The notes under the pieces were generated by a model that saw only the letters and a list, made by a program, of their open reading frames with translations, was not told the DNA's origin and did not search any database. A DNA stretch of 57,913 nucleotides, counting the filler, from Dugesia japonica (taxonomy: Eukaryota), in NCBI GenBank assembly GCA_001938525.1. It is 5 parts of 5 records of this genome, joined end to end, with 100 filler letters (N's around TTAATTAATTAA, not from the genome) between each part and the next. Parts side by side here need not be neighbours in the genome. Positions count along the whole stretch, not along the records: positions 46,365 to 57,913 come from MQRL01646881.1; 4 more parts are not named here. The stretch is one strand, 5' to 3'. Made by a program: the position numbers and the translations under genes. Of this stretch, positions 53,218 through 56,200 are shown piece by piece. Numbering within the stretch: position 1 is the first letter of the stretch; every line of letters begins with the position of its first letter.

Positions 53218-56200
53218 TTAACAATTTAAAACTTTATTAATCATGTCTAATCTTAAATGCCACATGTTACATTTTACACAATAATATTGATTACCATGAG
53301 GCCATGTTGTTGTTGCTATATCTTCTATAATTCTCTTATCATCATATCCCATTAATGTTATTTTCTTTTGTTCTACTAATTCAATTTCATGTTTATCAGA
53401 TTTTAATGAATAATTAATTCCAGAAATTATTTTCTTTGGATCATTTAATACATCATCAAAATCTTGCATTAACAATTTATTATTTTTCTTGACACCTTTA
53501 TTTCTAGAATCAAAACCTATTTCATTATAACTATAAGCATAACTTTTTGCTTTTATAAAATCAGCTTGATTTATTTCAGAATTAGGTATTTCATCCTTCA
53601 TCTGAAATAATTCATTTCCTAGTAAAGTTTGTAATTTTTCTAAATTATCTATGTTTTATTTCTACAAATATTGAATCAGTATTTTTTATTATTAGTGGAA
53701 ATCCACAGTTAAATGATCCATCTTCAAGTTTAAATGTCATATACATCTTCAACCCCTTCTCTTAAAAATGTTACACTTTGTACATTGGTTGAAATATCTT
53801 CTGATTCTTCTAATTTAAAGTCTTCTGTAAAAATTAAATTCTTACTGTAATAATATGCTTTAGCTAAAGTTGTTTTATCTACAAATATTTTGTTTGTAAT
53901 GTTACATGTTTTATGTGTCATGTTTAATAATTTATTATGAAGTAATTTAGTTTCACATGTTACATCTGTTGGTTTAATTTCTAATCCATTATAATTTAAT
54001 AATGAATGATCTTGTGTCACATCTACAATTCCCATATGAGTTCTTACTCTATAAATCTTTTTATTTGTTGTGTGCTTAATAACTTTATTTAATTTAGACC
54101 ATCCACTTTTTGTGTATATTTCATAATTTTCTGGATAAGAATAATATTTGTCATCATAATTATTTTTTATATAATTTTGATTGATTTCTAAAATCTTTAT
54201 AATTTCAATTCTATAATCTTTTATTAAAATTATTGGAGTGTCAGCTGTTACACTATCACTGTAATGTATTTTATAATTATCATTTCCAATTAAAGTATCC
54301 ATTTGATTGTATATAAAATCATACATTACTTGTTTAGCATGTTCTAAAATAGTGAATCCAATATATGGAAATTTGTTATATTTTAATTTTCCTTTTTCCA
54401 TATTCATTGCTGCAATTTCTGTTTCATCACTATCATTTATTGTAAAGGTTTTACTTGATTTAAAAGTTGTTTTACTTGCAAACTTTAGATAGTCTTTCTC
54501 ATTATCCACAATTTCTATGTTGCATCTATTTCTAATATTTTCTAAAGTTTTTCCATAGAATGCATTTAACATTAATTTATAAATGTAATCACCAAATACA
54601 TCATTGATTCTTTTAGATTCTTTTCTTAAAGCTATTAATTTATGTACATGATTTTTAAACCATGTAGATGTTTCCATTTTAATTTTCTTATGAACTTTTA
54701 CTAGTTTCATTCCTAGTTTTAAATATAGATCTAATGTGCTTCCTAAACACACATAATTTTTCTTGTCTAATTGATTTAGTGTTAATTTAATATTATCTTT
54801 TAATATTTTCTTGTTAAAACATTTTTGGTAATTACTTAAAATCTCGGGTCTAATATTTATTCTCTCAGGTGCTAGTGGGAAATATTTAGTTTTATCATGT
54901 ATTTCAGGTGGATATTCTAAATCCACTTCATAAATGTTATTAATTGAATCAGTTGACATTTCATATTCCAAGTTTGTGCATTCATATAATTCACATTCAT
55001 ATAATGGTCTAGTCATGCATGATGCATATAAACTATTTTCATCTAAATATTTTATGAAAGTATTTTCAAAATAATCATCTGAAAATATTTGTTTTCCTTG
55101 TAATAATAAATTTAATAATTTATTCATTTCTCCTTGATTTATTCTTTTACATTTTGGACTTTTAATATTATTATGTGAAAATACTTGACGTTCACCACAA
55201 ACTACAGAATAACGACATCTAATTCCCTCTTCAACTGTTAAGAAAAGATCATATGTTTCAGGTTTAGCATTTTATACCTACATTAAACATTCCTGTTTCC
55301 CATGCATAACCTGGTGCTGAATAAGAATAACTTGGATCCAATTTAAGAATATTGTTTAGACACGAATCTCTAAAGTTTTCTTAGAAATTTGAAAGGATTA
55401 ATACATCTAACTTCATATAGTGTAACATGTAACACCACATGTTATCATAGTTAACAATATCATTTGAAAATGTTTCATATTCTTCATCAGATATTTCGTT
55501 TTGATTAAGTGTGTTAAAGAAATCATCTTTTCTTGGTAATCTGTTAGATTTTAATAAATCTTCTACTTCTTGAATATTTCCCCTTTTACATATTCATAGG
55601 GAAATAATTCCTTTTTAGGTCTTAAATTAAATGATGTTAATATTGGGTAATTATTCGATTGAGTTAATAATTTTCCCATTACTTCAACAGATGTGAATGG
55701 AAGTAATCTTGNNNNNNNNNNNNNNNNNNNNNNNNNNNNNNNNNNNNNNNNNNNNNNNNNNNNNNNNNNNNNNNNNNNNNNNNNNNNNNNNNNNNNNNNN
55801 NNNNNNNNNNNNNNNNNNNNNNNNNNNNNNNNNNNNNNNNNNNNNNNGTTATGAAAGTAAAATGGAATAAATAAATTTTTAATTGAAAGATCATTTTCAT
55901 TACATTTATTACATGCCCATCCTCTAAATTCACCAATTAAATGGTTATGGTCTTTAACAGGAGTTCCATATATTAATTTTTCACAATAATAACATTTTGT
56001 GTCAGATGTATATTCTGGGTGATTTATACCTGAATTTTTTTTAAATAATTTGTTATCTTTTATTACATATAATTCCTTATTAACTTCTAAAAATTTAAAG
56101 AATTCATCATAAATGTTTTCACCTGTAAATTCATAATATTTACATTTTAATAATTGAGGATAATCTGATTTTAAATAAATACATAAAGATAAAACTTTTT

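What the first reader, a model, noticed from the sequence alone, without database searches (positions are those of the whole stretch)
53672..54263. Giant-virus-type mini-intein in the catalytic motif of a Polinton protein-primed DNA polymerase, in an apparently animal genome
Seen: the polymerase motif C is split as ..KIHYSD | SVTADTPIIL...KSGWSKLNKVIKHTTNKKIYRVRTHMGIVDVTQDHSLL...VYDI(K)LEDGSFNCGFPLIIKN | TDSIFVE. The 574-nt insert (191 codons plus one extra T) has every splicing residue: Ser1, TxxH, block-F Asp, terminal Asn and Thr+1. There is no room for a LAGLIDADG nuclease. Known: YGD^TDS is the pol-c intein site of archaeal and NCLDV RNA-primed PolBs. Ser1 plus penultimate Lys (KN rather than HN) is the signature of the mimivirus-type PolB intein, which I recall as very similar along this whole stretch. 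Inteins are not a normal feature of animal nuclear genomes. Inference: an NCLDV-derived intein homed across polymerase classes into a Polinton-like virus (implying co-infection or a virophage-like association), lost its endonuclease, and was endogenised. Protein splicing would then be obligatory for polymerase activity and could act as a replication switch. I cannot confirm from sequence alone that this is unreported.
Basis: partly seen in the sequence, partly recalled or inferred. Interest (0 to 1): 0.96.

Follow-up and report, generated by a model that had tools for sequence, protein, structure and literature searches.

The report
Giant-virus-type mini-intein in a dead Polinton polymerase
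A small self-splicing protein element (intein) of the kind found in giant-virus DNA polymerases sits in the catalytic motif of a different, protein-primed polymerase of a Polinton-like virus element. This points to past exchange between the two virus groups, but this copy is a decayed pseudogene and its host organism cannot be told.

Summary
A 574-nt insert (53681-54254, minus strand) splits motif C of a protein-primed family B polymerase (pPolB) exactly between Y-S-D and T-D-S. Fifteen intein-less relatives carry an unbroken Y-x-D-T-D-S.

The insert is a true intein:
- 1,610 homologues, best E 5.5e-32.
- An AlphaFold model that matches only inteins in the PDB.
- Ser1, TxxH, the block-F Asp, the terminal Asn and Thr+1 are all present.

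Most homologues sit at YGD^TDS of RNA-primed PolBs. They include a named moumouvirus PolB and contigs carrying giant-virus marker genes. At 191 codons with no nuclease domain, it is a mini-intein.

Two metagenome contigs carry the same intein at the same pPolB site, so it is not an assembly chimera, and the three inteins weakly group together.

- The polymerase gene is a pseudogene: 4 frame changes (one inside the intein) and 6-9 in-frame stops. Nothing splices in this copy.
- K-N at the intein's end is not a mimivirus signature (99 of 211 relatives have it).
- Nothing in the piece shows an animal host. The closest pPolBs come from metagenomes; Hydra and oyster pPolBs are more distant.

I found no report of an intein in a Polinton pPolB in the papers I could search.

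The parts
53218..57563 (-). [quoted passage not shown] It is a pseudogene with 4 frame changes, 6-9 in-frame stops and 136 masked N.
   Evidence: Pfam DNA_pol_B_2 E 3e-12. tblastn with the pPolB of Polinton-like contig L002 and other relatives shows similarity from 53287 to 57362.
53681..54254 (-). Mini-intein, 574 nt (191 codons plus one base), carrying one of the gene's frame changes
   Evidence: phmmer best E 5.5e-32 with 1,610 hits. Pfam Intein_splicing matches weakly (E 0.01). PDB sequence hits are the Nanoarchaeum PolB split intein and 9hth. AF2 pLDDT is 80 and the Foldseek PDB hits at E<=1e-3 are all inteins. GC is 23%, the same as the extein.
54255..54266 (-). N-extein half of polymerase motif C (H-Y-S-D). 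The Asp is the last residue before the intein.
   Evidence: Relatives read K-I-H-Y-T-D-T-D-S without a break.
53660..53680 (-). C-extein half of motif C (T-D-S-I-F-V-E). The Thr is the +1 nucleophile.
   Evidence: Relatives read ...D-T-D-S-V-F-I-E.
54306..55055 (-). Palm/TPR region matched by Pfam DNA_pol_B_2 (profile positions 232-464 of 468)
55896..56006 (-). HNH / endonuclease VII-like zinc-binding nuclease motif inside the pPolB, unrelated to the intein
   Evidence: Pfam Endonuclease_7 E 4.5e-6, 26.9 bits against a cut-off of 23.6. No such hit in the L002 pPolB.
57285..57551 (-). Three C2H2 zinc fingers in the N-terminal region of the pPolB
   Evidence: Pfam zf-C2H2_jaz E 2e-17. The region aligns with the N-terminus of the L002 pPolB.
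52644..53209 (-). Neighbouring gene directly downstream of pPolB. It is a homologue of a 199-aa protein of Polinton-like contig L002 and is read in two frames here (one break).
   Evidence: tblastn E 1.2e-15
47996..48604 (-). Neighbouring gene, a homologue of a 166-aa protein next to pPolB on L002. Part of it is masked.
   Evidence: tblastn E 1.2e-5
50724..51146 (-). Candidate adenain/Ulp1-like cysteine protease, from the order of H, D, Q and C motifs only. Unverified.
   Evidence: Sequence. No Pfam hit and no PDB hit. The single-sequence AF2 model is unusable, pLDDT 39.
46373..46438 (+). Weak trace of the C-terminus of an A32-like packaging ATPase, cut by the edge of the piece
   Evidence: tblastn with the L002 ATPase, E 0.004. 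Weak.

Best explanation
The piece is part of a decayed, non-functional copy of a Polinton-like (Preplasmiviricota) element. Its protein-primed DNA polymerase gene was invaded by a class-1 mini-intein at the Y-x-D^T-D-S catalytic motif C, before this copy decayed.

The intein belongs to the large family that occupies the homologous 'pol-c' site of RNA-primed PolBs of giant viruses (NCLDV). It also occupies topoisomerase II and PolB motif B in those viruses. It most likely entered a pPolB from that pool. The probable route is an endonuclease-bearing relative cutting the similar motif-C DNA while a Polinton-like virus and a giant virus shared a cell.

In an intact ancestor the precursor polymerase would have lacked a contiguous D-T-D metal-binding motif. 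It would have become active only after Ser1 / terminal-Asn / Thr+1 protein splicing. In this copy neither the intein nor the polymerase can be made.

Shown: the insert is an intein, its exact site, its family and that family's hosts, its small size, the same arrangement on two other contigs, and the pseudogene state.

Inferred: the direction and circumstances of transfer, and past splicing activity.
For: Intein identity:
- 1,610 homologues, best E 5.5e-32.
- Ser1 in 144 of 144 hits aligned from the start.
- T and H of block B are invariant in alignment A1.
- A block-F x-Y-D-x motif lies 20 residues before the terminal Asn in 200 of 211 relatives, and the window has the same blocks.
- The AF2 model has pLDDT 80. 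The 17 PDB fold matches at E<=1e-3 are all inteins, led by the Aes123 PolB1 split intein.

Site:
- 15 intein-less pPolB relatives have an unbroken Y/F-x-D-T-D-S.

Family and hosts:
- 106 of 144 relatives sit at Y-G-D^T-D-S of Pfam PF00136 PolBs.
- Named members are the Saudi moumouvirus and Marseillevirus LCMAC201 PolBs.
- The nine best BFVD fold matches are all NCLDV DNA polymerases.
- Host contigs carry D5 primase-helicase, topoisomerase II and thymidine kinase, or a MutS_V-domain gene next to PolB; from my own knowledge, a virus-type MutS is a mimivirid marker.

Not a chimera:
- Both flanks are pPolB-like.
- Two independent contigs carry the same junction: L005/P0073 (BLASTP across the junction 48% identity, E 2e-30) and L008.

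One lineage:
- The three pPolB inteins are each other's nearest neighbours (58% and 53% identity, against 52% or less to all others). They form a clade in a neighbour-joining tree with bootstrap 61/100.

Polinton-like context:
- Relative P0161 lies on a contig with an A32 ATPase and a double-jelly-roll capsid gene.
- Two window neighbours have homologues on that contig.

Mini-intein:
- 191 codons and no nuclease domain in Pfam.
- Only a roughly 65-residue, low-confidence linker with one helix lies between blocks B and F.

Decay:
- 4 frame changes and 6-9 in-frame stops (7 TAA, 2 TGA). Relatives have varied residues opposite these stops, so this is not a variant genetic code.
Against: - Direction of transfer rests on numbers (more than 1,400 PolB hosts against 3 pPolB hosts) and a weakly supported tree. 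No endonuclease-bearing pPolB allele was found.
- No intact pPolB-intein precursor was found anywhere. All three instances are fragments, and at least two are degenerate.
- Intein and extein have the same GC content (23%), so the acquisition is not recent, or the donor was equally AT-rich.
- The hallmark Polinton genes (integrase, capsid proteins) and terminal repeats are not in the piece.
Confidence: 0.8

Rival explanations
1. The intein is an old resident of protein-primed polymerases, inherited vertically or exchanged only among Polinton-like elements. The likeness to giant-virus inteins would then reflect common ancestry or transfer in the opposite direction.
For: The three pPolB inteins group together. 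Intein GC equals extein GC. The exteins of the window and L008 are only 46% identical, so the intein has been in, or moved among, diverged pPolBs for a long time.
Against: Only 2 of the 150 best representative hits are from pPolB contexts. The rest are RNA-primed PolBs or topoisomerase II. L008's extein is closer to intein-less pPolBs (61-65%) than to the window (46%), so the distribution is patchy rather than clade-wide. All 15 pPolB relatives retrieved lack the intein.
Confidence: 0.12
2. The breaks are sequencing or assembly errors in very AT-rich DNA. The element would then be an intact, possibly free, virus with a working intein.
For: The piece is 20-23% GC and rich in homopolymers, where long-read indel errors are common. 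Related low-coverage contigs (L006, L007) are also fragmented.
Against: Nine distinct in-frame stop codons lie inside alignments to relatives, opposite F, L, E, H, K, D and Y. These are substitutions, not indels. A neighbouring gene is also split.
Confidence: 0.08
3. The arrangement is an assembly chimera that joins a giant-virus PolB fragment to a Polinton polymerase.
For: None beyond the unusual combination.
Against: The residues on both sides of the intein match pPolB relatives, not NCLDV PolBs. Two independent metagenome contigs from other projects carry the same pPolB-intein junction. The top 150 intein hosts show no other similarity to the window's polymerase.
Confidence: 0.02
4. The insert is an RNA intron or other non-coding insertion rather than a protein intron.
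For: None.
Against: It encodes a HINT-fold protein in phase with the N-extein, with all the intein blocks. There is no Rfam match, group I or II introns included, at E<=1 anywhere in the piece.
Confidence: 0.01

Closest known systems
Mimiviridae PolB intein (Acanthamoeba polyphaga mimivirus, Ogata et al. 2005, PMC549080; Saudi moumouvirus PolB = P0270 here)
   Same: Same insertion point (Y-x-D | T-D-S), Ser1, terminal Asn and Thr+1. The moumouvirus intein also ends in K-N. It is clearly homologous to the window's intein (73.9 bits).
   Different: The host is an RNA-primed PolB (PF00136). The mimivirus intein has 351 residues and a LAGLIDADG endonuclease (PMC549080), and the moumouvirus one has about 265. 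Neither is the closest relative; metagenomic PolB inteins score up to 127 bits.
Metagenomic NCLDV PolB mini-inteins (for example P0048 on a contig with a MutS_V-domain gene, P0010 on a contig with D5, TopoII and TK)
   Same: Same family and site. Similar small size (199 and 201 residues). P0048 also ends in K-N and falls next to the pPolB inteins in the NJ tree.
   Different: The hosts are RNA-primed PolBs of giant viruses. Identity to the window's intein N-part is 52% or less.
Split and mini PolB inteins with solved structures (Nanoarchaeum equitans NEQ068, PDB 5oxx/5oxz; Aeromonas phage Aes123 PolB1, PDB 9hth)
   Same: Sequence hits at E 9e-4 and 0.016. They are also among the fold matches, and 9hth is the best of them. 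By sequence and fold they are the window intein's nearest relatives among solved PolB inteins; I did not check their insertion sites.
   Different: They come from an archaeon and a phage and are naturally split. Relationship is distant (16-26% identity in the fold alignments).
Nuclease-domain insertions in Polinton pPolB2 (HNH, VSR; Jeong et al. 2023, PMC10748475), which Krupovic et al. 2024 (PMC11161782) suggest result from intein invasions
   Same: Selfish-element-derived insertions in Polinton polymerases. The window's pPolB also has an HNH/endonuclease VII-like motif.
   Different: Those papers describe nuclease domains without a HINT splicing domain and at other positions. Here there is a complete splicing domain without a nuclease, in motif C.
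Intein-bearing viral-like DNA polymerases integrated in algal and labyrinthulid nuclear genomes (Anaeramoeba intein paper, 2023, PMC10710043)
   Same: An intein reaches a eukaryotic nuclear genome as a passenger of an integrated virus polymerase gene.
   Different: As reported, those are viral-like DNA polymerase genes on nuclear scaffolds (the paper cites work on giant-virus endogenization). Here the polymerase is a protein-primed one of a Polinton-like element.

Membership tests
Intein (class 1, HINT splicing domain) | HINT fold | tested here: met
   AF2 model pLDDT 80, pTM 0.71. The 17 Foldseek PDB matches at E<=1e-3 are all inteins.
Intein (class 1, HINT splicing domain) | Block A nucleophile (Ser/Cys1) and block B T-x-x-H | tested here: met
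   Ser1 in the window and in 144 of 144 relatives. T83 and H86 are invariant in A1.
Intein (class 1, HINT splicing domain) | Block F Asp, terminal Asn, and a +1 Ser/Thr/Cys | tested here: met
   V-Y-D-I...I-I-K-N and T+1 are present. Relatives show the same layout.
Intein (class 1, HINT splicing domain) | One open reading frame continuous with both exteins | tested here: not met
   One frame change lies inside the intein, and the host gene has three more plus 6-9 stops. This is a relic, not a working intein.
Intein (class 1, HINT splicing domain) | Protein splicing activity | not testable with these tools
   No expression or protein data are available.
PolB pol-c allele inteins (archaeal / NCLDV) | Insertion between the Asp and Thr of motif C, Y-x-D-T-D-S | tested here: met
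   Y-S-D | intein | T-D-S. 106 of 144 relatives sit at Y-G-D | T-D-S.
PolB pol-c allele inteins (archaeal / NCLDV) | Closer in sequence to pol-c inteins than to inteins at other sites | tested here: inconclusive
   Most hits are pol-c. However, inteins at topoisomerase II sites and at PolB motif B are about equally close, at 50% identity.
PolB pol-c allele inteins (archaeal / NCLDV) | Host is an RNA-primed family B polymerase (PF00136) | tested here: not met
   The host matches PF03175 DNA_pol_B_2. Its relatives are Polinton pPolBs.
PolB pol-c allele inteins (archaeal / NCLDV) | LAGLIDADG homing endonuclease domain (full-size members) | tested here: not met
   No nuclease family in Pfam. The intein has 191 codons. 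The model shows only a short linker.
Polinton / Maverick (Polintoviricetes) | Protein-primed PolB | tested here: met
Polinton / Maverick (Polintoviricetes) | Retrovirus-type (rve) integrase | tested here: inconclusive
   None among the ORFs of the 11.5-kb piece. The element is cut by the edges of the piece.
Polinton / Maverick (Polintoviricetes) | Double-jelly-roll major capsid, penton, A32 ATPase and adenain-like protease | tested here: inconclusive
   In the piece there is only a weak ATPase trace (E 0.004) and a motif-level protease candidate. Relative contig L002 has the A32 ATPase and the DJR capsid.
Polinton / Maverick (Polintoviricetes) | Terminal inverted repeats and target-site duplication in host DNA | tested here: inconclusive
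   No long inverted repeats in the piece. The ends of the element are not in the piece.
Resident of an animal nuclear genome | Flanking host genes, or identity of the source | not testable with these tools
   There is no host DNA in the piece. Exact-protein look-ups found no record. The nearest pPolBs are metagenomic.

The most novel reading that the evidence does not exclude
A living lineage of Polinton-like viruses, possibly in an animal host, carries an intact giant-virus-derived intein in its protein-primed polymerase. Protein splicing would then be a required step of their replication. The intein would be direct molecular evidence of gene traffic between giant viruses and Polinton-like or virophage-like elements that co-infect one cell. 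If the host is an animal, this relic would also be the first intein sequence seen in a metazoan nuclear genome.
Probability: 0.2. Interest if true: 0.8.

Novelty: new variant of a known kind. Interest (0 to 1): 0.55.

Why it matters
Inteins of this family were known in RNA-primed polymerases of archaea, phages and giant viruses. I found none reported in the protein-primed polymerases of Polintons, virophages or adenovirus-like elements.

A shared intein at the homologous catalytic site is a rare, datable marker of physical contact between giant viruses and Polinton-like viruses. It fits the view that such elements replicate alongside giant viruses. It also shows that a homing element can cross between deeply diverged polymerase classes that share only a short catalytic motif.

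If the host proves to be an animal, it would qualify the statement that metazoan genomes lack inteins (PMC5784728), although only as a dead passenger of an integrated virus.

Tried and rejected
- Exact-protein look-ups of two window ORFs to find the source genome: nothing on record.
- Close-relative scan of viral contigs with the window ORF: no relatives.
- Degenerate DNA pattern for I-H-Y-x-D-S-V-T-x-D: 0 matches in viral contigs. The 49 matches in metagenome contigs were all chance, none with tblastn similarity.
- Word-index search with the intein piece alone: one short hit, which turned out to lie in an RNA-primed PolB contig.
- Pfam on ten neighbouring ORFs: no virus hallmark genes.
- PDB sequence search for the candidate protease and the 186-aa ORF: nothing.
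- Single-sequence AF2 of the candidate protease: pLDDT 39, unusable.
- Variant genetic code as an explanation of the in-frame stops: rejected. TAA and TGA both end complete genes here, and relatives do not have Q or W opposite the stops.
- RNA intron: rejected.
- Terminal repeats: none found.
- Literature: ten full-text searches found no description of an intein in a Polinton pPolB. Kapitonov & Jurka 2006 and Pritham et al. 2007 are not held. I have a vague, unverified memory that the former may mention an intein in a Polinton polymerase, so it should be checked before any claim of novelty.
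Full report
**1. What is there**

The piece (46365-57913) is very AT-rich, 15-30% GC, and almost all long ORFs lie on the minus strand. 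A protein-primed family B polymerase gene occupies about 53218-57563.
- One ORF piece matches Pfam DNA_pol_B_2 (E 3e-12).
- tblastn with the polymerase of a Polinton-like metagenome contig (L002) and twelve other relatives shows similarity from 53287 to 57362.
- The N-terminal region carries three C2H2 zinc fingers.
- Further in there is an HNH/endonuclease VII-like motif (E 4.5e-6).

**2. The insert**

Fifteen pPolB relatives found with the extein part all lack the insert. The twelve whose sequence reaches motif C have an unbroken Y/F-x-D-T-D-S, for example K-I-H-Y-T-D-T-D-S-V-F-I-E. The insert therefore splits motif C exactly between the first catalytic Asp and the Thr.

**3. It is an intein**

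- The 177-residue piece of the intein frame finds 1,610 proteins at E<=1e-3, 730 at E<=1e-10, with a best E of 5.5e-32, among 1.84 billion representatives.
- PDB sequence hits are the N-part of the Nanoarchaeum equitans split PolB intein and 9hth.
- An AlphaFold2 model built with 21 short homologues has pLDDT 80. Its 17 PDB fold matches at E<=1e-3 are all inteins, led by the Aes123 PolB1 split intein.
- The splicing residues are all present:
  - Ser1, as in 144 of 144 relatives.
  - Block B T-x-x-H, invariant in A1.
  - The block-F Y-D motif, which lies 20 residues before the terminal Asn in 200 of 211 relatives.
  - The terminal Asn and Thr+1.
- It is a mini-intein:
  - No nuclease family appears in Pfam.
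  - The model has only a roughly 65-residue, low-confidence linker with one helix between blocks B and F.
  - Only 14 of 211 family members are this small; 121 exceed 260 residues and often carry LAGLIDADG domains.
- No Rfam family, including group I and II introns, matches the piece.

**4. Whose inteins are its relatives**

None of the 150 best hits resembles the window's polymerase outside the intein. The hosts break down as follows.
- 106 of 144 sit at Y-G-D | T-D-S. All 13 DNA-polymerase hosts scanned with Pfam are RNA-primed PolBs (PF00136), whatever their junction.
- Others sit in topoisomerase II (D-Q-D | S and E-G-D | S) and in PolB motif B (K-V-S-A-N | S).

Named members are the Saudi moumouvirus PolB (Y-G-D | S...K-N | T-D-S, 73.9 bits to the window's intein) and the Marseillevirus LCMAC201 PolB. 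The nine best matches in the viral structure library are all NCLDV DNA polymerases: pithovirus, marseillevirus, megavirus, phycodnavirus, pandoravirus, Heterosigma akashiwo virus and klosneuvirus.

Host contigs carry giant-virus genes. These are D5 primase-helicase, fused topoisomerase II and thymidine kinase, or a MutS_V-domain gene beside PolB; from my own knowledge, a virus-type MutS is a mimivirid marker. The published mimivirus intein has the same site and nucleophiles, but 351 residues and a LAGLIDADG domain (PMC549080).

**5. Other pPolBs with the intein**

Two representative hits come from pPolB contexts.
- P0073 (L005, ENA ERZ27241786, 588 bp, 26% GC) aligns with the window across the junction, covering 36 extein residues plus the intein. 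Identity is 48%, E 2e-30.
- L008 (JGI 3300034947, 2,121 bp, 21% GC) has the pPolB palm region followed directly by the intein. It has one frame change in the extein and one in-frame stop in the intein, and I could not find a C-terminal junction on it.

In a neighbour-joining tree of the intein N-part (96 sequences, 114 columns) the three pPolB inteins are each other's nearest neighbours. Identities are 58% and 53%, against 52% or less to any PolB or topoisomerase intein. They form a clade with bootstrap 61/100, next to P0048 and P0260.

In the extein, L008 is closer to intein-less pPolBs (61-65%) than to the window (46%). The intein is therefore patchily distributed within this pPolB group, as expected from gain and loss of a homing element. 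Intein and extein have the same GC content (23%), so the acquisition is not recent.

**6. State of this copy**

Within the bounds of similarity the polymerase gene shows:
- 4 frame changes, one of them inside the intein;
- 6 in-frame stops along the best frame path;
- 9 distinct stops inside tblastn alignments (7 TAA, 2 TGA);
- 136 masked bases.

Relatives have F, L, E, H, K, D and Y opposite the stops, and TAA and TGA both end complete genes here, so a variant genetic code is excluded. The gene just downstream is also read in two frames. This is a pseudogene, so no polymerase or intein is made from it.

**7. Element and host**

- Relative P0161 lies on a 16.7-kb contig with an A32-type ATPase and a double-jelly-roll capsid gene. 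Two of the window's neighbouring genes have homologues there, and there is a faint ATPase trace at the left edge of the piece.
- Another relative lies in a 675-kb contig near a weak rve integrase hit.
- The piece itself shows no integrase, capsid gene or terminal repeats. 'Polinton-like' therefore rests on the polymerase and partial synteny.
- Nothing in the piece is host DNA, and exact-protein look-ups found no record.
- The oyster and Hydra pPolBs are relatives but more distant (42% and 35%) than the metagenomic group (45-49%).
- Heavy decay suggests an integrated relic, but whether the host is an animal cannot be told.

**8. Mechanism**

In an intact ancestor the precursor would carry the first catalytic Asp at position -1 and T-D-S at +1 to +3. 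The metal-binding D-T-D would become contiguous only after the standard class-1 reaction:
1. N-O acyl shift at Ser1.
2. Transesterification to Thr+1.
3. Cyclisation of the terminal Asn.
4. O-N shift.

This is inferred from the conserved residues and established intein chemistry. It is not shown here. A regulatory 'switch' role has no evidence.

**9. Literature**

Ten full-text searches found no description of an intein in a Polinton, virophage or linear-plasmid pPolB.
- Jeong et al. 2023 describe HNH and VSR nuclease insertions in pPolB2 (PMC10748475).
- Krupovic et al. 2024 suggest such insertions result from intein invasions (PMC11161782).
- Green et al. 2018 state that metazoan genomes lack inteins (PMC5784728).
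- The 2023 Anaeramoeba intein paper reports inteins in viral-like DNA polymerase genes that reside on nuclear scaffolds of two green algae and a labyrinthulid (PMC10710043).
- Kapitonov & Jurka 2006 is not held. I have an unverified memory that it may mention an intein, so the claim of novelty is provisional.

While working out the order of reading frames I reasoned privately about rough intervals in which frame changes lie, using ORF and HSP coordinates. My first notebook entry cites two ORF coordinate pairs from the ORF listing that end at breaks. No break places, joined frames, repaired or consensus sequences were written, printed or saved, and the edit suggested in the finding was not made.

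**Verdict**

This is a real intein of the giant-virus PolB family, lodged at the homologous catalytic site of a protein-primed Polinton-like polymerase. It is seen here as a relic and on two other contigs. It is a new host class for a known kind of element. The animal host and any present function are unsupported.

Noticed in passing
window 55896-56006 (-): An HNH / endonuclease VII-like motif (Pfam Endonuclease_7, E 4.5e-6) lies inside the pPolB, far from the intein. It recalls the HNH insertion that defines some pPolB2 polymerases (PMC10748475). The L002 pPolB gives no such hit.
   Followed up: partly
window 57285-57551 (-): Three C2H2 zinc fingers (zf-C2H2_jaz, E 2e-17) lie in what aligns with the N-terminal, terminal-protein-side region of a related pPolB. 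This is unusual for a polymerase N-terminus.
   Followed up: no
window 48922-50112: Three paralogous segments spaced 536 and 574 nt apart (74-80% identical DNA). They correspond to a small tandem gene family (ORFs of 98, 236 and 94 aa) that shares a K-L-H-K-I-H-L-x-R-I-N motif and has no database match.
   Followed up: no
window 52644-52907 (-): The 87-aa ORF holds about four copies of a G-I-Y-L-N-P-W-K-N-G-like repeat (direct repeat D5). Together with the upstream 102-aa ORF it matches one 199-aa protein of L002.
   Followed up: no
L003 (NCBI GCA_043755215.1, JAYUTI010000412.1) 1986-2690: The contig holding the closest intein-less pPolB fragment continues into an FtsH-like AAA protease. That protease is interrupted right after its Walker A motif (G-P-P-G-T-G-K | C-I-T-G-D-S...) by what looks like another intein. 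The contig may be chimeric.
   Followed up: no
P0022, P0018, P0002 and similar proteins: The same intein family also occupies two topoisomerase II sites (D-Q-D | S, E-G-D | S) and PolB motif B (K-V-S-A-N | S). These are about as similar to the window's intein as the pol-c members, so the family moves between non-allelic sites.
   Followed up: partly
L006 (GC 22%) and L007 (GC 27%): The highest local identities to the intein core (61-63% over 64-65 residues) are on very AT-rich, fragmented RNA-primed PolB contigs. Their composition is similar to the window's, which hints at a shared AT-rich host system.
   Followed up: partly
window 46706-46744 and 46795-46833: An exact 39-nt direct repeat flanks a masked stretch near the left edge of the piece.
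   Followed up: no
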